IMG/VR virus record: IMGVR_UViG_3300032046_000001
Location: 124,001 to 188,000 of that record
Length of the DNA: 64,000 nucleotides
Direction: 5' to 3' (one strand)
The notes below the pieces were generated by a model. That model saw only the letters and a program-made list of their open reading frames with translations, searched no databases and was not told the origin of the DNA. The translations under genes were made by a program, and so were the position numbers. Below are positions 1 to 58,123 of the stretch, in pieces (positions within the stretch are counted from its first letter, which is position 1; each line of letters begins with the position of its first letter).

Positions 1-1
1 T

Positions 2-1075
2 CGACAGAAAACATATAAAGTTTTAGCCAATGCTCTTTATGGTATTTTAGGAACTAATATTTATAGATTCTTTAATCTTGATATGGCATCTTCGATTACA
101 CTATCAGGACAAGAAGTTATTAAAAATTCAATTTTACATGTTGATAAGTATATGGATAATTTAAAGAGAGGAATTAAAGAAGATGTTGATATCACAATAT
201 CAAAAGAAAATGTCTACACTGATTGGATGGATGTGAAATTGAAATATATCATTACAAGCGATACCGATTCGATATTAGCGACATTATCAAAATTTATAAA
301 AAGTAAAGATTATGAAACATCAATTCAAGAAATGACAGATATCTGTTCGAGTATTCAAAATTTTATAAACAATCAAGTTGTTTCAAGAATAATAAATAGA
401 CATAATGTTCCAATTGATAAAAATCGATTAAAAATTAAAAATGAATTGATGTGTTCGAGAGGTTTATTTGTTAGCAAGAAACACTACGCACTCTATGTAA
501 TATTTCAAGAGAATAAACGTGTTGATGAAATGACAATTACTGGATTAGAAATAAAACGTCGTGATTTTTCATCATATACAAAAGATTGTATGAAAGAACT
601 TCTTGATATTATTTTAAAATCTGAAAAAATATCATTTAATCAAATTATGTCATATGTCAAGGAGAAAGAATATGAATTCATTAAAAGAATTCGATGTGGT
701 GATAAAACTGTTGCAAGACCAAGTGGTTGGAAGAAAAAATTAGATGAATATAAAGTTATTCCTCAAGGAATTTACGCAATGATGAACTGGAACGATTTAT
801 TATATAATTCATTCGAATGTGGTGTTCGTGGATATTTATTTAAAATTAATGGCATAGATATTTCAAAGACACCAAAGAATGTTATTGAGAATTATAATAA
901 AATATTTGTATCTGGTGGTAAAACTTTAGAAACCATATGTGTACCGGATGAAGAATCCAGACTTCCTGAATATTTTATCCCAGATATGAAAGAGATGTTA
1001 AAGTTTCACTGGATTGATCGTTACAGTCAGTTATTAGCACCAATTATTAAACCAGTTGAATTAGTAAAAATTTAA
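2..1075 (+). CDS. Family B DNA polymerase, C-terminal part (5' truncated by window)
   Basis: Frame is open from nt 2 (RQKTYKVLANALYG = motif B KxxxNxxYG) into the 83..1075 ORF, with SDTDS (motif C), KKHYA and GLEIKR motifs. Confidence 0.93.
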   Translation, partial: RQKTYKVLANALYGILGTNIYRFFNLDMASSITLSGQEVIKNSILHVDKYMDNLKRGIKEDVDITISKENVYTDWMDVKLKYIITSDTDSILATLSKFIKSKDYETSIQEMTDICSSIQNFINNQVVSRIINRHNVPIDKNRLKIKNELMCSRGLFVSKKHYALYVIFQENKRVDEMTITGLEIKRRDFSSYTKDCMKELLDIILKSEKISFNQIMSYVKEKEYEFIKRIRCGDKTVARPSGWKKKLDEYKVIPQGIYAMMNWNDLLYNSFECGVRGYLFKINGIDISKTPKNVIENYNKIFVSGGKTLETICVPDEESRLPEYFIPDMKEMLKFHWIDRYSQLLAPIIKPVELVKI

Positions 1076-1210: not shown

Positions 1211-1816
1211 ATGAAAATTTATGAAAATTTAGATTTACAAGATTTAGATGTAGAAGTTTGGAGAACTATAAAAGAATACCCAGATTATTCTATTAGTAAT
1301 TTAGGAAGGGTTAAATCATTAAAATTTGGAAAAGAAAGAGTATTAAAACAAGGTAAAAATAGTAGAAAATATTTTTGTGTTGTTTTATCTAAAAATAAAA
1401 ATAAAAAAACAAAATTAGTTCATATACTTGTTTTTGAAATTTATAATAATTACAAATTAAAATCAAATGAGTGTATTCATCACAAAGATGGGAATAAAGA
1501 AAATAATTATTATAAAAATTTAGAAAGAATGACTAAATTAGATCACTTAAGTTTACACAACAAAGGAGAAAACAATCCTATGTTTGGAAAATATTTATCT
1601 ACAAAAACAAAAATGATGATAAGTAAAAATCATTTCGATAATAAAGGTGAAAATAATCCACATCATAAACTAACAGAAGAACAAGTTATCCAGATAAAAT
1701 TATTATTAAAAGAGGGAATATTAACTCAAGAAGAAATAGCTGATATATTTGGAGTTGGTAAAATGACAATTTCAAAAATAAAGAGAGGAAAATTATGGAA
1801 ACATGTGAAAATATGA
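1211..1816 (+). mobile_element. NUMOD4-HNH homing endonuclease with C-terminal HTH
   Basis: VWRTIKEYPDYSISNLGRVKS (NUMOD4), IHHKDGNKENN (HNH), KLTEEQVIQIKLLL...TQEEIADIFGV HTH; ATG 1211 follows GGAG (track ORF starts 1190). Confidence 0.88.
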
Positions 1817-2475
1817 AAAGTGATATGTCAATAAAAGCAATTGAGTGTTTTTCAACCTATCAAGGAGAAGGGTTATTTTCAGGAAAAAGAGTTGTATTAA
1901 TAAGATTCAAAGAATGTAATCGTGATTGTTGGTATTGTGATACAAAAAATAAAATGAAATATTATGAGGAAGGTGAATATAAATTAGAAGATATTCAAAA
2001 ATTGATAGATGTTGAATGTGCCAATCTTCTCATAACAGGTGGTGAAGTAACATTTGATAAAAATTTTCATCAAACAATATTATTATCAAATAAATTAAAA
2101 TATTCCGAGATGTATATTGAAACAAATGGTTATAAATTAGAGGAACTTTATCAATATGTAAAAAATAATAAAAATATTTATTTTGTCTATTCGCCAAAGA
2201 TCTTCAATGATAAAGATCTATTTAGTGACCCAACTGATGTCTTTATGAACTTGATTGGTAGAAATTTAATTATAAAAGTTTTATATGATGGAACTAATCC
2301 CTTTGTGGAAAAATATTTAAATAAGATTACTAAATACAGAGACAGTGTTTATTTACAACCTATGGGTTCAACCAAAGAAGATATTATTAAGAATATGAAA
2401 GTTGTTCTTGAGGCTGCGGATAAATATAAGTTTAATATTTCAAGTAGATTACATCTAATTCATGATTTCAGATAG
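1813..2475 (+). CDS. queE: 7-carboxy-7-deazaguanine synthase-like radical SAM protein
   Basis: FSTYQGEG, IRFKECNRDCWYCDT (CxxxCxxC), LITGGE, IETNG, SPK, YLQP, RLH; ATGA overlap with the upstream gene. Confidence 0.85.
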   Translation: MKSDMSIKAIECFSTYQGEGLFSGKRVVLIRFKECNRDCWYCDTKNKMKYYEEGEYKLEDIQKLIDVECANLLITGGEVTFDKNFHQTILLSNKLKYSEMYIETNGYKLEELYQYVKNNKNIYFVYSPKIFNDKDLFSDPTDVFMNLIGRNLIIKVLYDGTNPFVEKYLNKITKYRDSVYLQPMGSTKEDIIKNMKVVLEAADKYKFNISSRLHLIHDFR

Positions 2476-38927: not shown

Positions 38928-39659
38928 CTATTTATGTCCAACAACCTTATCATAATCTACCCGTTTTTGATAGATACAATCAAGTTCCTTGATCAGTATC
39001 TCTTTGATTATTTTCAAATCACCTAATCTTAAATAAACATCATCAAATTGGCCATCATTTAATAAATGGTCAATAGTTGAGTTTATAATAATAACTGGAT
39101 CTAAATTCTCAGGTTGAGACTGTGATATCGATCTCGATTTTGCTTCAGTGATATCACACATCATTAAAATCGCAGCCTCAAGACTTTGAGGTTTCATCAT
39201 CTTATATCTAAAAGTAGAACTATCAGTTGTTTGTGATTTATCAAAAAAATATTTAACAATTGTCGATCCATGATGTTGTGAGACAATATCGATAATATCA
39301 CGAGAAAAATTTCTATTGTTTAAGAGTATTAAAGCACCATCTGATACATGCCTTGTTATTATTTGATAACTAATAGTTGGTTCTAATGTATCATGAATAT
39401 TTTCACCTTCCGCTTGATTCTCACTGAAGTATTTTGGATTAAATAATTTTCCAATATCGTGATATAAAGCGCAAACTTTCATGAATATTGCGTGTAGTCC
39501 TAAACTAGATCCAACACTTTCAACCATTGTCATTACAGCTTGGGAATGTTTAAATGATCCAGGACAAGCCTCTTTAAACATAGTTAATAAACGATTTTGT
39601 GGATCTAATAATGAACTCAAATCAGATTCAGATTGTTGAATTTTCAAATATTTAAACAT
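38928..39659 (-). CDS. HD-domain phosphohydrolase resembling the cytoplasmic domain of PgpH/YqfF
   Basis: PGSFKHS, ALYHDIGKLFNPKYFSENQ, QIITRHV, VSQHHGSTIVKYFF, FRY...P.S.EAAILMMCD; no TM region. Confidence 0.8.
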   Translation of the reverse strand: MFKYLKIQQSESDLSSLLDPQNRLLTMFKEACPGSFKHSQAVMTMVESVGSSLGLHAIFMKVCALYHDIGKLFNPKYFSENQAEGENIHDTLEPTISYQIITRHVSDGALILLNNRNFSRDIIDIVSQHHGSTIVKYFFDKSQTTDSSTFRYKMMKPQSLEAAILMMCDITEAKSRSISQSQPENLDPVIIINSTIDHLLNDGQFDDVYLRLGDLKIIKEILIKELDCIYQKRVDYDKVVGHK

Positions 39660-50556: not shown

Positions 50557-52002
50557 TTAAACTAAATGGTGACATTCTTTTTTAGACATAATAATTTTCA
50601 GTTCTTCATACGATACTGGTTTGAAATTATTATTATCAACTCCAACATCGTAGGACTTTCCTAATGACGGAAGTTCTCCATGTGAATTGCCCACTATTAT
50701 ATGTTTTCCATTTCTTCTAATAACTATAGTTTTATTTTTAACCTTAACACACCAAAAATGTTCATTATTTACAGTCTCAATAAAAACTTTATTTTTTAAA
50801 TTATCGTGTGTTCTACACGATCGTTTAGTTACTACCAATTCATAATTAATTTTTTTTGCAAAACCACCGCGTCGTTCAGAAATATTACACATGTATTCAT
50901 TTCTTATACATGCTGTTTGTATTAAATCTGCTTCTATTTTTTTAGATGTGTATATTAAAATTGAAGTTTTATTTTTATAACCATCTGTATGAGTATATTC
51001 TTCTAATATTATATCTAATTGATTTTGATTTGAATCAATAATTATATCACTAATAGGTTTTAATCTAATATTATAAAAATAATCTGGTTTATGAAAATTA
51101 AAACAAATTGAATCATCTTTCTGTTTATTTCTGCTATAATTAATATTCAATTTTTTTAATAAATTTTCTATTCTGTTAATTTTTCTTGTTTTAAAAACTC
51201 TAATTCTTATTAAATCAGTATTACATAAATTACCATCTGCCGCTATCCAAACTAATAACTTAATTTGGTCATTGTTTAAATTAATTCCAGTTTGATTGCC
51301 AATTGCAGATTTTTTAAATTTTCTTTTATTGATTTTAAAAATTTCATCCGTATAAAATTTTCTAAATTCCTCTTTTTTTCTTCCTATTAAAATATCAATC
51401 AATATATGATTTGGTGTTAATCTTAAATCTAACCCCTTTGATTTTATATTATACACATCACCTGTATGATTATAATCTATAATTTCGTCTATTTCATTAT
51501 ATTCTAATTTTTTATTTTCAATATTTAAAGTTAATATTTTATGACCATATAATAATTCACTTCTTTTTTTCCAACCGTTATCTGTTAAAATTTCTGTTTC
51601 ATCATCTAAACAATGGGCATATAGTTCCCATGCTCCATGATGAGAACAATTCCAAACTCTCATCGCATAATGACACAGAGTTATTTTTTGTTGTCCAATC
51701 CTAATATCATGAAGATTGTGAACTTCTTTACAATATTCTTTAATTGTATTTATAAATCGAAAATCATGATTCCCAAGGATGAATATTTTTTGACCATTCA
51801 TTTTACTAAGTGCAGTTATTGCACCTTCCTTGGTCATCGCAATATCACCTAAATAATAAACAGTGTCTTTTGTCCTAACGATTGAATTATGGTTATCCAA
51901 AAGACACTGTTGTTGTTCGTACTCATTTTTAAAAGGCCGATTGCAGTACCTCAATATATTATAATGAAGATTGTGCCAATCAGCAGTAAAGAAAATATTC
52001 AT
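50557..52002 (-). CDS. Calcineurin-like metallophosphoesterase interrupted by an intein
   Basis: DWH, LGD, GNHD, HY, AH|SH motifs; spliced product about 172 aa. Confidence 0.88.
   Translation of the reverse strand: MNIFFTADWHNLHYNILRYCNRPFKNEYEQQQCLLDNHNSIVRTKDTVYYLGDIAMTKEGAITALSKMNGQKIFILGNHDFRFINTIKEYCKEVHNLHDIRIGQQKITLCHYAMRVWNCSHHGAWELYAHCLDDETEILTDNGWKKRSELLYGHKILTLNIENKKLEYNEIDEIIDYNHTGDVYNIKSKGLDLRLTPNHILIDILIGRKKEEFRKFYTDEIFKINKRKFKKSAIGNQTGINLNNDQIKLLVWIAADGNLCNTDLIRIRVFKTRKINRIENLLKKLNINYSRNKQKDDSICFNFHKPDYFYNIRLKPISDIIIDSNQNQLDIILEEYTHTDGYKNKTSILIYTSKKIEADLIQTACIRNEYMCNISERRGGFAKKINYELVVTKRSCRTHDNLKNKVFIETVNNEHFWCVKVKNKTIVIRRNGKHIIVGNSHGELPSLGKSYDVGVDNNNFKPVSYEELKIIMSKKECHHLV
50686..51612 (-). 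mobile_element. 309-aa intein with LAGLIDADG-like domain, ending Gly-Asn
   Basis: Starts CLDDETEILTDNGWK; LTPNH block B; WIAADG and THTDG; ends FWCVKV..RRNGKHIIVGN, +1 Ser. Confidence 0.9.
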
Positions 52003-52951: not shown

Positions 52952-53134
52952 GAAAATAGAAAAGGAGAAAATTCAAGTCATCACAAATTGACAGAACGAG
53001 ATGTTATTCAAATAAAATTATTATTAAAAGAAGGAAAGTTAACTCAAAAAGAAATAGCCGATATGTTTGGGGTTTCAGTATATACGATTTCAGATATAAA
53101 AAGAGAAATAACTTGGTATCATATAAAAATTTAA
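52952..53134 (+). pseudogene. Orphan C-terminal HTH of a homing endonuclease (not in ORF track)
   Basis: KGENSSHHKLTERDVIQIKLLLKEGKLTQKEIADMFGV...TWYHIKI*; in-frame stop at 52934-36, no nuclease domain upstream. Confidence 0.75.
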
Positions 53135-54330
53135 TTACCTACTATAACACCTATTGGAAATAATTTAACCACTGGTTCTATTAAATCAGATTGATCTTCA
53201 ATTACTTTATCAATATTTTTATATACTGCCGGAGCTTCGTCGAGTGGAATCTGATTTGTCCAAATTCTCTCCATTGATTTTTCCACTAATTCTCTATTTA
53301 AAGTTTTATTAGCCTCTCTTCTTCCTAATACTCTACCAGCACCATGCGATGATGTTTCAAAACTCTCTTTATTTCCCAGTCCACGCACGATATAACTTGC
53401 TGTTCCCATAGACCCTGGTATAACACTTAGTTGATCTTTTCGAGCTGCTGTCGCTCCCTTACGATGCACAACAACATCCTTTCCAAAATGCCTTTCAAAT
53501 GCTACATAGTTATGATGAATATTAATCTCTTGTTGAACTGAACAAGCTAACATTCCACAAGTAATAGACGTAAATATATTCATCATTCTTCTTCTATTTT
53601 CAAAGGCAAATTTTAAAGCGAAATTCATCAATTCATAATACGCCTTACCTTCTTTAGTTTCAATTGGTAAATATGCCAAATTTGGATCTGGTAACTGAAT
53701 ATGATATATATTCATTAAGTGTGTTGCTTGATGATGAAATTCATTACATATTTGATAACCAAGATTACGACTACCGGAATGAATCATCAACCATATATAA
53801 CCATCTTCACCTTTTAACATTTCAATAAAATGGTTTCCAGACCCTAAAGTTCCTAATTGATATCTTGATTCATTCAATGCTGACTGAATATAAGTTGGAA
53901 ATTCTGGGTGATCTTCAAAACCGTCCCATGTTTGTGGAAGAGTATGACCAATTCCTTTGCCATGTGGAACAACCCGACATGTTTCACTCATGATTCTATC
54001 AATCTGTTCTGATATGATATTTTCTGATTTGAAATCGGTTTGAACTGCAATTATACCACATGCTATATCACTACCAACTCCATAAGGAAATATAATATTC
54101 TCAGTGGCTGCAACACCACCGATGGGAAAACCATAACCACAGTGTGCATCCGCTGATAAAACTCCCCATTTATAAATAAATGGAAAACTACAGATATTAC
54201 CCATCTGCTGTAGTGCTGAATTCTCAACATCTTCACACCAAGACTTGATTGGAACATGAAGATTTTGTGCAATCTCTCTTTCCGCAATTCCTCTAAATAA
54301 ACTTGACTCTTTAGATAATACCCATTTCAT
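53131..54330 (-). CDS. rtcB: RNA 3'-phosphate ligase RtcB
   Basis: DAHCGYGFPIG, DIACG, GTLGSGNHFIE, HSGSR, HHNY, HRKGAT, PGSMGT, SHGAGR, DEAPAVYK. Confidence 0.95.
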   Translation of the reverse strand: MKWVLSKESSLFRGIAEREIAQNLHVPIKSWCEDVENSALQQMGNICSFPFIYKWGVLSADAHCGYGFPIGGVAATENIIFPYGVGSDIACGIIAVQTDFKSENIISEQIDRIMSETCRVVPHGKGIGHTLPQTWDGFEDHPEFPTYIQSALNESRYQLGTLGSGNHFIEMLKGEDGYIWLMIHSGSRNLGYQICNEFHHQATHLMNIYHIQLPDPNLAYLPIETKEGKAYYELMNFALKFAFENRRRMMNIFTSITCGMLACSVQQEINIHHNYVAFERHFGKDVVVHRKGATAARKDQLSVIPGSMGTASYIVRGLGNKESFETSSHGAGRVLGRREANKTLNRELVEKSMERIWTNQIPLDEAPAVYKNIDKVIEDQSDLIEPVVKLFPIGVIVGN

Positions 54331-54902
54331 ATATGTCCCTCAATTTTCATTGTAGTCAATTTAACATTTTTGGCATGATAGTAATATTCTGGTGAAATAA
54401 AACCTCTTGATTTTTGTATATCGATGTATATATGTTTGTTAATAAATTCTGAACCATAATCATCAATTTTATCTCCATCAATATTTTTTATTTTTAATTT
54501 CTTCTTTCCCTGAGATAAAATATGATCTTCTGTAGCTTGAAAAATCTCATCTTTTCTATAATCTTGTTCCATCAAATCTATTAAATAACACGCCCTTAAA
54601 ATATAAATTTTATTTTTCTGTATAATAGGAAATGCGTCTCTAACATCACACAGCCATATTTCATATCTAATTCTCCCTGGAAATTTATATCTCCATGATG
54701 TTAAAACGTGTCTAAGTTCGACTTCAATATTATACAAGTCTTCTTCACGATCAATTTTATAAATGAAAGCTGGTCTTTTTGACCACTTATTTGGTTCATA
54801 TATTTGACACAATTGGTGTCCGAGAGGTAATACAGATGATGTTCTTCTATCACCTTTTATAGAATCATCATATTCGAGAACAACTGCTTTAATAAACATC
54901 AT
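54327..54902 (-). CDS. Hypothetical protein
   Basis: 191 aa, coupled on both sides. Confidence 0.65.
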   Translation of the reverse strand: MMFIKAVVLEYDDSIKGDRRTSSVLPLGHQLCQIYEPNKWSKRPAFIYKIDREEDLYNIEVELRHVLTSWRYKFPGRIRYEIWLCDVRDAFPIIQKNKIYILRACYLIDLMEQDYRKDEIFQATEDHILSQGKKKLKIKNIDGDKIDDYGSEFINKHIYIDIQKSRGFISPEYYYHAKNVKLTTMKIEGHI

Positions 54903-55936
54903 GACCTCCTAAATATTCCGATATCACCATAAAGTGATTCAAACTCTTCTCTTGTATATAGAGATTTTTTATCCAATCCAAAAAAATCAAATCGGATATT
55001 TAGTCTATTCTCAATACAATTAATATACTCAAATGTTTCTTCAGAAACTTCTCTGTCGATATAATCAACATGATTCATTACAAATCTTGTTGGTCTATTT
55101 ACTATAATCGATTTTCTAGCAACTCCATAATCAAAACATCCAGCAATTCTTCTAATCCTATTAGTAACAGACGTATATTCAATAACTTGTCTTGATAACT
55201 GTTTTGATAACTCATCCCATGTTGTTTCTAAAAATAGTGGACCTGAATTACCACCAACTCTTATAGGATATGATCTGAAAACCATTACTATATCATCAAC
55301 ATCGAGTGGGCTTAAACCAGCTTCAGACACAAAACCAGCCGCTGAAGTATCACGAGAAGTAACAAACGGATAATGTTGTGAATGAAGAAGTGATAATCCG
55401 AATCCTTGGGTTCCCTCAATAATAATTCTATTTCCCATATCGAGTTGTATTCTCATGAAACGTTGAGATTCTCGAATATAATCATATAATAAAGGTTCAT
55501 CTCCAGCTAAACGTACTTTATCACGACCAATACGTCTAATCACAGCTTCACCAGTTCCACTACAAGTAGAACCTATTTTGCAACCTAATAATTTTTCTTT
55601 TTCATTATTGACATCTTCATCAGATATTAACATGGCATTTGGATCTATTATTAATCGATTTATTGAAATACCTGTTAATTCAATTTCTTTGAATAATAAT
55701 TTTAAATTGATATAACTTCCAGCAGGTAATACACAATTAATACGAGAAGTAATAGCAGATACGGGAAGTTGTCTCAATATAATAGATTCACCAGAATTAT
55801 TAATTATTGTATGTCCAGAATTTGGACCACCAACTCTAACAACAGTAGAGACGTTCTTGTCAAATGATAAATAGTAAGTTACTTTGCCTTTGCCTTCAGA
55901 ACCATATTGACCACCAACTATAACTGTAACTGGCAT
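54899..55936 (-). CDS. Adenylosuccinate-synthetase-family protein with PurZ/PurZ0 signature
   Basis: GGQYGSEGKG (Ser13 where PurA has Asp13), GPNSGHT, EGTQGF, YPFVTSRD, PIRVGGNSG, SVTNRIRR, NHVD. Confidence 0.75.
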   Translation of the reverse strand: MPVTVIVGGQYGSEGKGKVTYYLSFDKNVSTVVRVGGPNSGHTIINNSGESIILRQLPVSAITSRINCVLPAGSYINLKLLFKEIELTGISINRLIIDPNAMLISDEDVNNEKEKLLGCKIGSTCSGTGEAVIRRIGRDKVRLAGDEPLLYDYIRESQRFMRIQLDMGNRIIIEGTQGFGLSLLHSQHYPFVTSRDTSAAGFVSEAGLSPLDVDDIVMVFRSYPIRVGGNSGPLFLETTWDELSKQLSRQVIEYTSVTNRIRRIAGCFDYGVARKSIIVNRPTRFVMNHVDYIDREVSEETFEYINCIENRLNIRFDFFGLDKKSLYTREEFESLYGDIGIFRRS

Positions 55937-56226
55937 TTATTTTTTCCTCTATTTCTAAGTTTATTATTATAATTTTCAACATCATTTTTGATTTTTTCAA
56001 CTAGAAATTCTATAAAAGTATCTTTATCAAATTGTGTCATTTCTTCATCAGATATTTTAAATGTACGCGTGAGTGTACCTGAATATGTTTTCATACCTTC
56101 AATAAAAAATACTGAAATTTCTATCTGATTATCAAAAATATCAAAAGATAAGGTATTACTGTAAGGTAATTTTTGTGAGACTGTGTATAATAAATTTTTT
56201 GTCTCTAAAAGAAAAGTCAGTGGCAT
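55918..56226 (-). CDS. Hypothetical protein
   Basis: 102 aa. Confidence 0.55.
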   Translation of the reverse strand: MPLTFLLETKNLLYTVSQKLPYSNTLSFDIFDNQIEISVFFIEGMKTYSGTLTRTFKISDEEMTQFDKDTFIEFLVEKIKNDVENYNNKLRNRGKNKCQLQL

Positions 56227-56247
56227 ACAATGTTCTCCATTTGTTTT

Positions 56248-56697
56248 TCAATCTTCATGATTTTCTTCTAAAATTTTTTTCATTATTTCTATGGCATCTT
56301 GTTTAGCATGTTCTTCATCAGTGGCAAATAAATAAACTCCTCGATGATGAATATAACCTATATACTGCATAAACGTTTCTGGTGATTCATACACATAATC
56401 TTTTTCAACAACTTTAATTTCTTTTATTTTTAGATTCTTAGAATCATATTTTGAAGGTTTCGGATAGTTTGCAAAGTTTGATCTAATATCAGGTTCAAAA
56501 ATAATACAAAAATAACTTAAGTTGTGTGTGTTTGTTTTTTCAACATTTTCTACTTCGTGTTCTTCAATATAAAAATCATTTTCATCTGGAAAATTTTTCT
56601 TAAACTCTTCAAGATTTGGATTATTCATTACGGTTATTATTGGGCGATAATTATCATCTCTATCTTCATCATTTTTAAAAAAAATATAAATTTTCAT
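56248..56697 (-). CDS. Hypothetical protein, probable paralogue of 56694..57104
   Basis: Both start MK(I/V)Y and end with (F/Y)A.DE.HA...A..IM. Confidence 0.65.
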   Translation of the reverse strand: MKIYIFFKNDEDRDDNYRPIITVMNNPNLEEFKKNFPDENDFYIEEHEVENVEKTNTHNLSYFCIIFEPDIRSNFANYPKPSKYDSKNLKIKEIKVVEKDYVYESPETFMQYIGYIHHRGVYLFATDEEHAKQDAIEIMKKILEENHED

Positions 56698-57104
56698 ATC
56701 TTCTCTTTCTCCTTATCTAAAAAATCAATCATTATTTTTACAGCCTCAAATCTGGCATGATCTTCATCTTCAGCATACACACATGTACTGTATTGATTTT
56801 CAGCAGGTACTGAATAATTACGATTGATTCGATTTAACCCTTTTAAATGATATATATTTTTTTTCCATTTTCTAACAGATAAAATAACTGTAGATTTCCC
56901 TTTAAAATTTATAATATATAAATCCCTATCATCAAATGGTTCTGTATCATCAATATGAATTCCATTTAAATTTCCCAATTCAAATGGTTTTATATATACC
57001 TCTTCCATTCTTGAAAATTTTCTCAAAAATTCATCTCTTTGTTCTTCTGTTAATATCCCGACAGTTGTATCATCTTCTTCGTCGATTATAGCGTATACTT
57101 TCAC
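56694..57104 (-). CDS. Hypothetical protein, probable paralogue of 56248..56697
   Basis: As above. Confidence 0.65.
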   Translation of the reverse strand: MKVYAIIDEEDDTTVGILTEEQRDEFLRKFSRMEEVYIKPFELGNLNGIHIDDTEPFDDRDLYIINFKGKSTVILSVRKWKKNIYHLKGLNRINRNYSVPAENQYSTCVYAEDEDHARFEAVKIMIDFLDKEKEKI

Positions 57105-57106
57105 AA

Positions 57107-57295
57107 TTATCCTCCTAAAATTTCTATTAGATCATTTAAAAATGACAAGATTTCATTTTTATTTTTTGATTCTGTTATTTCATCTTTATAATTTGAAAAA
57201 TAATGTATGATGATATTTCTAATATCTTTTAATATTAGAATATCAACCTTAATAAACTCAATTCTATCGCTAGAAAAAAATGGATGAATATACAT
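57107..57295 (-). CDS. Hypothetical protein
   Basis: 62 aa, SD AAGGAG. Confidence 0.6.
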   Translation of the reverse strand: MYIHPFFSSDRIEFIKVDILILKDIRNIIIHYFSNYKDEITESKNKNEILSFLNDLIEILGG

Positions 57296-57502: not shown

Positions 57503-58123
57503 ATGAAAATATTTGAAAATTTAGAAAATGAATTGTGGAAAGTTATAATAGAATTTCCAGATTATTCTGTTAGTAATATTGGTAGAATTAAGTCATTAAA
57601 ATTTGGAAAAGAAAAAATATTAAAACAATGTAAAGATGGTAAAGGTTATTTTTGTATTAATTTATATAAAAATGGAAAATGTAAGTTAAGAAAAATTCAT
57701 ATATTATTATACGAAACTTTTAATAATTATAAATTAAAAAATAATGAATGTATTCATCATAAAGATGAAAATAAAGAAAATAATAATTTTGATAATTTTA
57801 AGTTGATGACAAAATCTAAACATAGATATTATCACATGAAATATGATAATAATCTAAGAAGTATGTTAGGAAAACATCATACTAATAATACCAAAAATAT
57901 CATAAGTAAAACGATGAAAGAAAAATTTAAAAATAAAGAATTAAATTTAAAAGGTGAAAATCATCCAAGACACAAACTAACAGAAGAACAAGTAATTCAA
58001 ATTAAATTATTATTAAAAGAAGGTATATTAACTCAACAAGAAATAGCTGATATGTTTTGTGTTAGTCAAATGACAATTTCATATATAAAAAGAGGAAAAC
58101 ATTGGAACCATATAAAAATTTAA
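57503..58123 (+). mobile_element. NUMOD4-HNH homing endonuclease with C-terminal HTH
   Basis: LWKVIIEFPDYSVSNIGRIKS, IHHKDENKENN, KLTEEQVIQIKLLL. Confidence 0.88.

What the first reader, a model, noticed from the sequence alone, without database searches (positions are those of the whole stretch)
54899..55936. PurZ0-like synthetase: candidate 2-aminoadenine (Z) pathway
Seen: GSEGKG with Ser13 at the position of PurA catalytic Asp13, SVTNRIRR in place of the PurA TTGRxRR loop, and NHVD keeping the Asp of the NKxD-like motif. Established: Asp-to-Ser at this position marks PurZ enzymes, which use dGMP to make the dZ precursor; the PurZ0 subgroup uses GTP and resembles short archaeal-type PurA. 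Inference: this phage may make dZTP, with a family B polymerase in a T4-like head lineage. No DatZ or MazZ partner is recognisable in this window.
Basis: partly seen in the sequence, partly recalled or inferred. Interest (0 to 1): 0.78.

Follow-up and report, generated by a model that had tools for sequence, protein, structure and literature searches.

The report
PurZ-family synthetase in a jumbo phage
A 312-kb T4-like jumbo phage carries a conserved enzyme with the hallmarks of the enzymes that start 2-aminoadenine (Z) DNA synthesis, but it belongs to an unstudied branch shared with bacterial gene cassettes and has none of the usual helper genes, so whether the phage DNA contains Z is open.

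Summary
Window 54899-55936 (minus strand) is an intact 345-aa adenylosuccinate-synthetase-fold ORF with GSEGKG (Ser13), SVTNRIRR and NHVD. It is under purifying selection (dN/dS about 0.18).

It carries every residue that separates dGMP-using PurZ enzymes from PurA (Y11, S13, P224, W240, T255). It keeps the Asp of a GTP-type donor pocket, so its predicted chemistry is PurZ0-like.

The ML tree does not place it in the characterised actinophage PurZ0 clade or in the PurZ clade. It sits in a large uncharacterised part of the non-Asp13 clade. That part also holds accessory genes of a conserved bacterial cassette (exonuclease-kinase / PurA-like / DCD-like / dNK) and lone genes in other large phages. 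An AU test does not reject sisterhood to PurZ0 (p = 0.13).

The complete genome has a family B polymerase and a Gp23-type capsid. It has no DatZ, MazZ/DUF550, DUF5664, DmtZ, PolA or PurB, and only a canonical-looking dUTPase 150 kb away. All these negative searches had positive controls.

Best reading: a GTP-dependent, dGMP-using PurZ-type synthetase. Z in the virion DNA is plausible but unproven, and full substitution is doubtful.

The parts
54899..55936 (-). PurZ-family (Ser13) short adenylosuccinate-synthetase-fold ORF, 345 aa
   Evidence: ORF list; PF00709 E 2.9e-47; phrog_1211 E 7e-70; AlphaFold model pLDDT 87, TM 0.80-0.85 to archaeal PurA, PurZ0 and PurZ structures; dN/dS 0.18
55883..55915 (-). 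P-loop GGQYGSEGKGK (residues 8-18). Ser13 (55898-55900) replaces the PurA catalytic Asp. Tyr11 (55904-55906) replaces the Trp of long PurA and ToyG-like (Ala/Gly/Val in Elusimicrobia short PurA)
   Evidence: [quoted passage not shown]
55238..55267 (-). PIRVGGNSGP (residues 224-233): signature of the non-Asp13 clade, with Pro224, a two-residue insertion and Ser231, against (V/S/P)TRV-G(P/A)GP in the Asp13 PurAs examined
   Evidence: alignment blocks and clade consensus
55217..55219 (-). Trp240, equivalent to phiVC8 W252, the top PurZ-discriminating residue in the metaGPA study
55148..55180 (-). Aspartate/nucleotide loop EYTSVTNRIRR (residues 253-263). Thr255 (55172-55174) is equivalent to phiVC8 T262 (Gly in all Asp13 PurAs examined). 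Asn259 replaces the Gly of PurA TTGRxRR
55061..55075 (-). NTP-base motif NHVDY (residues 288-292). His289 and Asp291 are as in short GTP-using PurA (THID) and E. coli-type TKLD. The five ATP-using PurZ references have NF(C/A/M)(N/Q)
54327..54902 (-). 191-aa ORF whose start overlaps the synthetase stop by 4 nt. No family match. A 190-aa ORF occupies the same position between the synthetase and RtcB in a relative at 74% identity
53131..54330 (-). RtcB RNA ligase, downstream in the same gene string
   Evidence: PF01139 E 2.9e-103
55918..57295 (-). Four small upstream ORFs (102, 149, 136 and 62 aa) of the same minus-strand gene string. The three scanned (102, 149, 136 aa) have no family match
1..1075 (+). 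3' part of the only replicative polymerase gene, family B (ORF G000:121842-125075, 1077 aa; it starts upstream of the window)
   Evidence: PF00136 E 1.6e-37; no PF00476 in the genome
14796..16274 (+). T4 Gp23-type major capsid protein, 492 aa
   Evidence: PF07068 E 1.2e-32

Best explanation
The ORF encodes a functional, GTP-dependent member of the PurZ family. I predict that it phosphorylates the 6-oxo group of dGMP and displaces the phosphate with L-aspartate, giving N6-succino-2-amino-2'-deoxyadenylate. Host adenylosuccinate lyase (PurB) and host or phage kinases would then turn this product into dZTP, which the phage's family B polymerase could incorporate opposite T. Shown here: the fold, the intact catalytic framework, purifying selection, the full set of PurZ-versus-PurA discriminating residues, the GTP-type donor pocket, and membership of the non-Asp13 clade. 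Inferred: the substrates, and everything downstream of the enzyme. No enzyme that removes dATP is recognisable, so I expect partial substitution or none, unless an unrecognised dATPase exists. My estimates: PurZ-type chemistry about 0.7; any Z in virion DNA about 0.45; complete A-to-Z replacement about 0.2.
For: Ser13 plus Y11, P224, W240 and T255 match phiVC8 S14, F12, P233, W252 and T262. These are conserved across all non-Asp13 clades and differ in every Asp13 PurA examined (residue roles). Asp291 in NHVD is as in GTP-using PurA and PurZ0, whereas the five ATP-using PurZ references have Asn or Gln. The careful tree supports a non-Asp13 clade at 99/96 that holds all characterised PurZ and PurZ0 and excludes Elusimicrobia short PurA, a ToyG-like protein and long PurA. 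Of the 150 nearest representatives out of 1.84 billion proteins, only one has Asp13. The PDB sequence match to PurZ0 7VF6 is E 1.2e-43, and the structural TM-score is 0.84. dN/dS is 0.18-0.26, and the gene is conserved in seven related phage sequences. Gene GC (32%) is close to genome GC (28.6%), so it is not a recent import. Bacterial relatives sit beside a deoxynucleoside kinase and a dCTP-deaminase/dUTPase-fold protein, which fits a deoxynucleotide substrate.
Against: No member of the query's sub-clade has been assayed. The protein is below the curated cut-offs for both PurZ (227.8 against 300) and archaeal PurA (255.7 against 368). The complete genome lacks DatZ/YfbR-like, MazZ/DUF550, DUF5664, DmtZ/NDT, PolA and PurB, and the positive controls for these searches worked. 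The only Dut-family gene is about 150 kb away. It passes the canonical dut cut-offs (120.5 against 103), which characterised DutZ proteins do not (76-92), and its nearest relatives are dUTPases of phage records not known as Z phages. The closest homologues are accessory genes in bacteria, so the clade may do something other than genome substitution. At 28.6% GC, about 35% of bases would have to be drawn from the dGMP pool.
Confidence: 0.5

Rival explanations
1. The enzyme has PurZ-type chemistry, but its role is to manipulate the nucleotide pool or to act in phage-host conflict, not to substitute the genome. The same sub-clade forms the core of an accessory bacterial cassette (exonuclease-kinase / PurA-like / DCD-like / dNK). 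That cassette could drain dGMP and GTP, or make a poisonous or signalling purine deoxynucleotide during infection. The phage copy could be a captured component used to counter or mimic that system, or to redirect dGMP.
For: The query nests among bacterial and plasmid sequences in a 35-row clade supported at 100/96. The cassette is intact in unrelated MAGs (L002, L107, L108, L008). Related modules sit on plasmids beside toxin-antitoxin, TOPRIM/UvrD, HEPN/NTase, transposase and integrase genes. The gene is an extra paralogue next to a normal PurA, and it was found in only 1 of 201 sampled genomes of one phylum. In phages of this part of the tree the gene stands alone, without Z-pathway partners.
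Against: No cassette protein matches a known defence family beyond weak kinase-domain hits. No paper describing such a system was found. None of the other cassette genes is in the phage. The hypothesis is purely contextual and does not say what the product does.
Confidence: 0.25
2. It is an ordinary auxiliary PurA (IMP + Asp + GTP to adenylosuccinate) that boosts adenine nucleotide supply for a very AT-rich genome.
For: It has the same fold, and its best PDB sequence hit is archaeal PurA (2d7u, E 2.4e-46; TM 0.85). Its highest NCBIfam score is to the archaeal PurA model. The GTP pocket is of PurA type. The genome is 71% A+T.
Against: The catalytic base Asp13 is replaced by Ser, and four more positions are of PurZ type rather than PurA type. 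The protein is well below the PurA equivalog cut-off (255.7 against 368). The tree places Asp13 short PurAs outside its clade at 99/96.
Confidence: 0.07
3. It aminates another modified purine nucleotide, for example a 7-deazapurine as ToyG does in toyocamycin-type pathways, giving a different DNA or nucleotide modification.
For: A short homologue (35% identity) sits in a complete FolE/QueC/QueD/QueE/PurB/GuaC-like cluster on a Rhizobium plasmid. A QueE/NrdG-like radical-SAM ORF exists at window 1795-2475.
Against: The ToyG-like protein keeps Asp13, Trp11 and Gly255 and branches outside the non-Asp13 clade. G000 has no QueC, QueD, FolE, PurB or GuaC homologue. The radical-SAM ORF is far below every QueE cut-off.
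Confidence: 0.05

Closest known systems
PurZ0 (GTP-using 2-aminoadenylosuccinate synthetase) of actinophages: Gordonia phages Archimedes (PDB 7VF6) and Ghobes, Arthrobacter phage Wayne
   Same: Ser at the PurA-Asp13 position; an aromatic F/Y at position 11; Thr255, Pro224 and Trp240 equivalents; Asp kept in the NTP-base motif (TMLD/SFAD against NHVD); short archaeal-type architecture; 33-41% identity; TM 0.84.
   Different: The ML tree places the query in the other half of the non-Asp13 clade, although AU p is 0.13, so this is not decisive. PurZ0 phages are 40-83 kb actinophage genomes (sizes; GC not measured here). They carry PolA (DpoZ-1) and an adjacent DutZ, with or without DmtZ and DUF5664 (PMC12884076). 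This is a 312-kb, 28.6% GC, PolB, Gp23-head phage with none of those next to the gene.
PurZ (ATP/dATP-using) of cyanophage S-2L, Vibrio phage phiVC8 and Acinetobacter phage SH-Ab 15497
   Same: The same dGMP-pocket residues (S14, F12, T262, P233, W252 in phiVC8 numbering) and the same fold (TM 0.80-0.82).
   Different: In the five references PurZ has GSTGKG and NF(C/A/M)(N/Q), with Phe and Asn/Gln adapted to adenine. The query has GSEGKG and NHVD. PurZ is flanked by DatZ and MazZ, which are absent here. Identity is 27-31%.
Short (archaeal-type) PurA: Pyrococcus horikoshii PH0438 (2D7U/5K7X) and Elusimicrobia housekeeping PurA
   Same: The best sequence and structure matches (E 2.4e-46; TM 0.85); the same length; a GTP pocket of the form T/N-H-x-D.
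   Different: These have Asp13 and Gly at the Thr255 position, lack the PIRVGG-NSG signature and Trp240, and branch outside the non-Asp13 clade.
Uncharacterised bacterial cassette: RNase_H_2+AAA_18 / Ser-or-Gly13 PurA-like / DCD-like / dNK
   Same: These are the closest homologues of all (51-57% identity). They share the NH(L/V)DY motif and all PurZ-type residues, and fall in the same supported 35-row clade.
   Different: They are encoded in bacterial chromosomes and plasmids as an accessory paralogue, with three fixed partners. The phage has none of the partners. No function is known.

Membership tests
PurZ superfamily (non-Asp13 2-aminoadenylosuccinate synthetases) | Ser (rarely Gly) in place of the PurA catalytic Asp13 | tested here: met
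   Ser13 in GSEGKG. It is invariant in the 7-member phage clade.
PurZ superfamily (non-Asp13 2-aminoadenylosuccinate synthetases) | [quoted passage not shown] | tested here: met
   Y11, T255, P224 and W240.
PurZ superfamily (non-Asp13 2-aminoadenylosuccinate synthetases) | Groups with characterised PurZ and PurZ0 to the exclusion of Asp13 PurAs | tested here: met
   A 93-row clade at 99/96 in the LG+C20 tree rooted on long PurA. Elusimicrobia PurA and the ToyG-like protein fall outside it.
PurZ superfamily (non-Asp13 2-aminoadenylosuccinate synthetases) | Passes the curated NCBIfam NF038379 (amino_Aden_PurZ) cut-off | tested here: not met
   227.8 bits against a cut-off of 300. The model's cut-off was not tested here on any reference PurZ or PurZ0.
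PurZ superfamily (non-Asp13 2-aminoadenylosuccinate synthetases) | Catalyses dGMP + Asp + NTP to N6-succino-2-amino-dAMP | not testable with these tools
   Needs an enzyme assay.
PurZ0 subgroup | GTP-type donor pocket (the Asp of the NKxD-like motif retained) | tested here: met
   Asp291 in NHVD. PurZ0 has TMLD, TMVD or SFAD. The five ATP-using PurZ references have Asn or Gln.
PurZ0 subgroup | Falls in the monophyletic PurZ0 clade | tested here: inconclusive
   The ML tree places it elsewhere, with PurZ0 at 100/100 and the query inside a separate 100/96 clade. Forcing them together costs 44.3 lnL, with p-AU 0.131.
PurZ0 subgroup | The genome encodes DutZ (reported in all 98 PurZ0 genomes, PMC12884076) | tested here: inconclusive
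   One Dut-family ORF lies at G000:25161-25787, far from the gene. It passes the canonical dut cut-offs, unlike Ghobes, Wayne and Hiyaa DutZ, and its nearest relatives are dUTPases of phage records not known as Z phages. Its specificity cannot be read from sequence.
PurZ0 subgroup | DpoZ-1 type family A polymerase; DmtZ and/or DUF5664-1 | tested here: not met
   No PF00476, PF05014 or PF18909 match, and no hits with Ghobes gp51 or Wayne gp51 profiles. Controls were positive.
PurZ (ATP-using) subgroup | Adenine-adapted pocket (phiVC8 F295, with Asn or Gln replacing the Asp) | tested here: not met
   His289 and Asp291.
PurZ (ATP-using) subgroup | Z-cluster partners DatZ and MazZ/DUF550 | tested here: not met
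   PF12917 and PF04447 give no match. Custom DatZ and MazZ HMMs give best E 1.3 and 0.11. hhalign probabilities are 2.5% and 0.2%. Controls were positive.
Canonical adenylosuccinate synthetase PurA | Catalytic Asp13, and passing the PurA equivalog cut-offs | tested here: not met
   Ser13. NF003295 scores 255.7 against 368, and TIGR00184 scores 185.7 against 395.6.
Z-genome phage | 2-aminoadenine replaces adenine in virion DNA | not testable with these tools
   Short-read assemblies read Z as A. It needs LC-MS, restriction resistance or PacBio kinetics.

The most novel reading that the evidence does not exclude
The query's branch of the non-Asp13 clade is a third, functionally distinct PurZ lineage. 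In bacteria, the four-gene cassette (exonuclease-kinase, PurZ-like, DCD-like, dNK) would be an inducible system that converts deoxyguanylate into succino-amino-dAMP or dZ nucleotides, to starve or poison infecting phages. Large phages such as this one would have captured the synthetase alone and would use it, with a family B polymerase and no dATPase, to make a partly Z-substituted, AT-rich genome. This would be the first Z synthesis outside small PolA or PrimPol phages.
Probability: 0.2. Interest if true: 0.85.

Novelty: new variant of a known kind. Interest (0 to 1): 0.62.

Why it matters
Z-DNA biosynthesis has been characterised in small phages of about 40-80 kb. In those phages purZ or purZ0 sits in a tight cluster with dATP- and dGTP-hydrolysing enzymes, and usually with a dedicated family A polymerase.

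Here, a PurZ-type enzyme with all the substrate-pocket hallmarks is conserved in a complete 312-kb, 28.6% GC, T4-like-head phage with a family B polymerase and none of those partners. The same arrangement recurs in other large phages.

If the DNA contains Z, it would extend the modification to jumbo phages and to a different replication machinery. It would also show that a dATPase is dispensable, or that an unknown one exists. If the DNA does not contain Z, then PurZ homology alone, which is the basis for predicting more than 2000 'Z viruses', over-calls the modification.

The link to a widespread bacterial cassette makes a further question testable: whether bacteria themselves use PurZ-type chemistry, for example in defence.

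Tried and rejected
- Single-protein scans of viral contigs and genome contigs found almost nothing. The alignment-based viral scan worked, but its search pattern required Ser or Gly at position 13, so I did not use its residue counts as evidence.
- Drawing relatives for a virus record is not possible.
- The Tong et al. 2023 PurZ0 paper is not held. I took the PurZ0 properties from PMC12884076 and from alignments.
- The plasmid collection gave no short archaeal PurA, because Haladaptatus PurA is the long type. I used Elusimicrobia short Asp13 PurA instead.
- I considered and rejected three candidates: the 174-aa HD protein as a DatZ analogue, the 114-aa MazG-like ORF as MazZ, and the window's 243-aa HD protein as DatZ, since it is PgpH-like.
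- The immediate neighbours have no family matches. The ESM Atlas gave only sub-threshold GIY-YIG/T5orf172 leads for the 191-aa ORF.
- PADLOC has no model for the bacterial cassette, and literature searches for it found nothing.
- The promoter and terminator scan was uninformative: 52 promoter-like sites against 61 expected by chance.
- Structure comparison confirms the fold but cannot separate PurA, PurZ0 and PurZ.
- I did not use read laying, because Z reads as A in sequencing data and so it could not address the question.
Full report
THE OBJECT

Window 54899-55936 is one intact ORF of 345 aa on the minus strand. The plus strand is closed by stops. The window is G000:124001-188000 of a complete 312,420-bp virus record with 127-bp terminal repeats and 28.6% GC. 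The gene's GC is 32%.

The protein matches Pfam Adenylsucc_synt (E 2.9e-47) and PHROG 1211, '2-aminooxy adenylosuccinate synthetase' (E 7e-70).

An AlphaFold model (pLDDT 87, pTM 0.88) superposes on several solved structures:
- Pyrococcus PurA: TM 0.85.
- PurZ0 7VF6: TM 0.84.
- phiVC8 PurZ: TM 0.82.
- S-2L PurZ: TM 0.80.

This confirms the fold but does not discriminate between the subfamilies.

IS IT FUNCTIONAL AND NATIVE?

Six phage-like homologues at 68-98% identity exist in public assemblies. Against the two for which DNA was fetched, dN/dS is 0.175 and 0.188. The gene's composition is close to that of the phage genome. It is therefore a maintained phage gene, not a recent insert or a pseudogene.

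PurA OR PurZ?

By NCBIfam's curated thresholds it is neither:
- Archaeal-type PurA model: 255.7 bits against a cut-off of 368.
- PurZ model: 227.8 bits against a cut-off of 300.

I therefore compared residues and built trees. A preprint that contrasted adenylosuccinate-synthetase proteins from dZ-modified and unmodified contigs lists the discriminating residues in phiVC8 numbering. [quoted passage not shown] P233 and W252 also differ between the groups. F295 and Y298 stack on the adenine of ATP.

In a 196-sequence alignment the query has Y11, S13, T255, P224 and W240 at these positions. Every non-Asp13 clade shares these residues. The Asp13 enzymes (Salmonella long PurA, Elusimicrobia short PurA, a ToyG-like protein) have instead W or A/G/V, D, G, S/V/P and F/D/N/A at the same positions. 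The PIRVGG-NSGP segment, with its two-residue insertion, is a further signature of the non-Asp13 clade.

At the base-specifying motif of the NTP site the pattern is as follows:
- The query has NHVD.
- GTP-using PurA has TKLD or THID.
- Characterised PurZ0 has TMLD, TMVD or SFAD.
- ATP-using PurZ of phiVC8, SH-Ab 15497, S-2L, ZP6 and OH has NFCN, NFAN, NFAQ, NFCN and NFMN.

The sequence therefore predicts a dGMP-type acceptor pocket combined with a GTP-type donor pocket. That is the PurZ0 combination.

PHYLOGENY

An exhaustive HMMER search of 1.84 billion cluster representatives found 6512 relatives. Among the best 150, only one has Asp13, and it is the housekeeping short PurA of Elusimicrobia.

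I built a careful tree of 102 sequences (LG+C20 PMSF, UFBoot/SH-aLRT, rooted on long PurA). It recovers a non-Asp13 clade at 99/96, with the ToyG-like protein and the Elusimicrobia PurA outside it. Inside that clade:
- One half (93/84) holds characterised PurZ0 (Ghobes, Wayne, Hiyaa; 100/100), characterised PurZ (100/98), and a clade of kinase-fused proteins (99/93).
- The other half (83/83) holds the query and its six phage-like relatives (100/100), nested in a 35-row clade (100/96) made mainly of bacterial and plasmid sequences.

The bootstrap had not fully converged. An AU test that forces the query clade together with the PurZ0 clade costs 44.3 log-likelihood units but gives p = 0.131. The separation from PurZ0 is therefore the best estimate, not a demonstrated fact.

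THE REST OF THE PATHWAY

According to PMC12884076:
- PurZ phages carry DatZ with MazZ or DUF550, and usually DpoZ-2.
- All 98 PurZ0 genomes carry DutZ, and most carry DmtZ, DUF5664-1 and DpoZ-1.

In G000 I found none of the following:
- DUF550.
- DUF5664.
- NDT/DmtZ.
- A YfbR-type HD protein.
- A hit with custom DatZ and MazZ profiles built from five Z phages; the best E-values were 1.3 and 0.11.
- A family A polymerase.
- Adenylosuccinate lyase.

The same family searches do find the expected genes in S-2L, phiVC8, SH-Ab 15497 and Wayne.

G000's possible candidates do not hold up:
- The two HD proteins are a PgpH-type domain (4s1b, E 1.7e-41) and a CCA-enzyme/PhnZ-like HD domain.
- The 114-aa MazG-like ORF scores only 16 bits.
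- hhalign gives 2.5% probability for the 174-aa HD protein against DatZ, and 0.2% for the 114-aa MazG-like ORF against MazZ.

The one Dut-family ORF (G000:25161-25787) is about 150 kb from the gene. Its nearest relatives are dUTPases from phage records not known as Z phages, at about 40% identity. It scores 120.5 bits on the dut equivalog model, above the cut-off of 103. Characterised DutZ proteins score below it (76-92 bits). DutZ retains dUTPase activity, so this evidence is suggestive only.

The immediate neighbours of the gene have no family matches. In a relative at 74% identity, a 190-aa ORF and RtcB follow the synthetase in the same order as in the window. The replicase is family B and the capsid is Gp23-like.

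WHERE ELSE THIS BRANCH OCCURS

In bacteria, the closest homologues (51-57% identity) lie in a conserved cassette. Its order is an RNase_H_2 (PolB-exonuclease-like) plus AAA_18 kinase protein, then the Ser- or Gly13 PurA-like protein, then a 330-365-aa DCD-fold protein, then a deoxynucleoside kinase.
- It is intact in Nitrosospira multiformis and three unrelated MAGs. A three-gene form without the kinase occurs in one more MAG, and a two-gene form (PurA-like plus DCD-like) on a Sinorhizobium conjugative plasmid.
- A Nitrospirota MAG has it in addition to a normal long PurA.
- Only 1 of 201 sampled genomes of that phylum, the MAG itself, has it.
- Neighbouring genes include toxin-antitoxin, HEPN/NTase, HNH and UvrD genes.
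- It matches no PADLOC defence family, and I found no paper describing it.

In viruses, members of the same half of the tree occur in large records. None has DatZ-type HD, DUF550 or DUF5664, only G000 has a Dut, and no cassette partner lies within 10 kb of the gene.

| Record | Size | Polymerase |
|---|---|---|
| G000 | 312 kb, complete | PolB |
| G203 | 250 kb, complete | PolB |
| G204 | 81 kb, 23% complete | PolB |
| G202 | 105 kb, 93% complete | PolA |
| G205 | 188 kb, 73% complete | PolA |

Another homologue (51% identity) lies in a large phage contig that has an intein-bearing PolB.

INTERPRETATION

The enzyme is very probably a PurZ-type synthetase that uses GTP. Whether it serves to build Z-DNA is uncertain.

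In favour: every characterised member of the non-Asp13 clade does so, and host PurB and kinases suffice downstream in known systems.

Against: the lack of any dATP-clearing activity; an AT-rich genome that would need a third of its bases drawn from dGMP; and the fact that the nearest relatives work in bacteria, where genome substitution is not expected.

I therefore rank the explanations as follows:
1. A PurZ0-like enzyme feeding at least partial Z incorporation (0.5).
2. The same chemistry used for pool manipulation or phage-host conflict (0.25).
3. A canonical PurA role (0.07).
4. A 7-deazapurine or ToyG-like role (0.05), which argue against.

NOVELTY

[quoted passage not shown] What is new here:
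- The lineage: an uncharacterised part of the non-Asp13 clade.
- The carrier: a jumbo phage with a Gp23-type head and a family B polymerase.
- The absence of the canonical Z cluster.
- The connection to a conserved bacterial cassette.

I rate it a new variant of a known kind.

Noticed in passing
L002:7986-12697; L107:4963-9636; L108:5063-9696; L008:6404-10685; L003:7920-12147: A conserved bacterial accessory cassette: RNase_H_2 + AAA_18 kinase protein, Ser/Gly13 PurA-like, DCD-fold protein (330-365 aa), deoxynucleoside kinase. It is present alongside a normal PurA, is found in only 1 of 201 sampled genomes of one phylum, sits beside HEPN/NTase and HNH genes, and has no PADLOC model. It is a candidate undescribed nucleotide-modifying or defence system.
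   Followed up: partly
L104:7431-9774 (Burkholderia thailandensis plasmid NZ_CP141811.1): A separate clade of about 520-570-aa proteins fuses an AAA_18 kinase domain to the Ser13 PurA-like domain and pairs with a DUF7002 protein. On this plasmid it lies beside TOPRIM and UvrD-helicase genes (Gabija-like), a transposase, a PD-(D/E)XK nuclease and an integrase. A near-identical gene occurs in a viral contig (L035).
   Followed up: partly
L105:7375-15721 (Rhizobium leguminosarum plasmid NZ_CP071402.1): A toyocamycin/sangivamycin-type 7-deazapurine cluster (FolE, short Asp13 PurA-like, PurB, QueE, IMPDH/GuaC-like, nitrile hydratase, QueC, HAD, PRT, QueD) recurs on several rhizobial plasmids.
   Followed up: partly
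window 38928-39659 (-): A phage-encoded 243-aa HD domain closely related to Listeria PgpH (Lmo1466, E 1.7e-41), a c-di-AMP phosphodiesterase family. It may interfere with host cyclic-dinucleotide signalling.
   Followed up: partly
window 50557-52002 (-): A 481-aa calcineurin-like metallophosphatase appears to be interrupted by an intein. The translation shows an insertion, but the Intein_splicing match (21.9 bits, cut-off 35.8) and the Metallophos match (18.7 bits, cut-off 21.5) are both below Pfam's cut-offs.
   Followed up: no
window 52988-53134 (+) and 57503-58123 (+): The 48-aa ORF between RtcB and the next minus-strand gene closely repeats the C-terminal helix-turn-helix tail of the 206-aa HNH/NUMOD-like endonuclease at 57503-58123. 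It looks like a remnant of a second homing-endonuclease copy.
   Followed up: no
window 53131-54902 (-); L106:6463-8282: RtcB RNA ligase preceded by an unknown 191-aa ORF. ORFs of matching size and order (190 aa, then RtcB) follow the synthetase in a relative at 74% identity, but both are absent from the 91% relative (L005), which suggests a mobile two-gene unit.
   Followed up: partly
window 1795-2475 (+): A radical-SAM ORF directly after the polymerase gene, with weak QueE/NrdG-like matches far below the cut-offs. There is no QueC, QueD or FolE in the genome.
   Followed up: partly
P0188 and P0271-P0389: Elusimicrobia use a short, archaeal-type Asp13 PurA as what appears to be their housekeeping enzyme, with Ala, Gly or Val where other PurAs have Trp11.
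   Followed up: no
L109:1-15014: A homologue at 51% identity lies in another large phage contig, next to a DNA ligase and near an intein- and LAGLIDADG-bearing family B polymerase, ClpP, RlaP and thymidine kinase. This is a second PolB phage lineage with a lone PurZ-like gene.
   Followed up: partly
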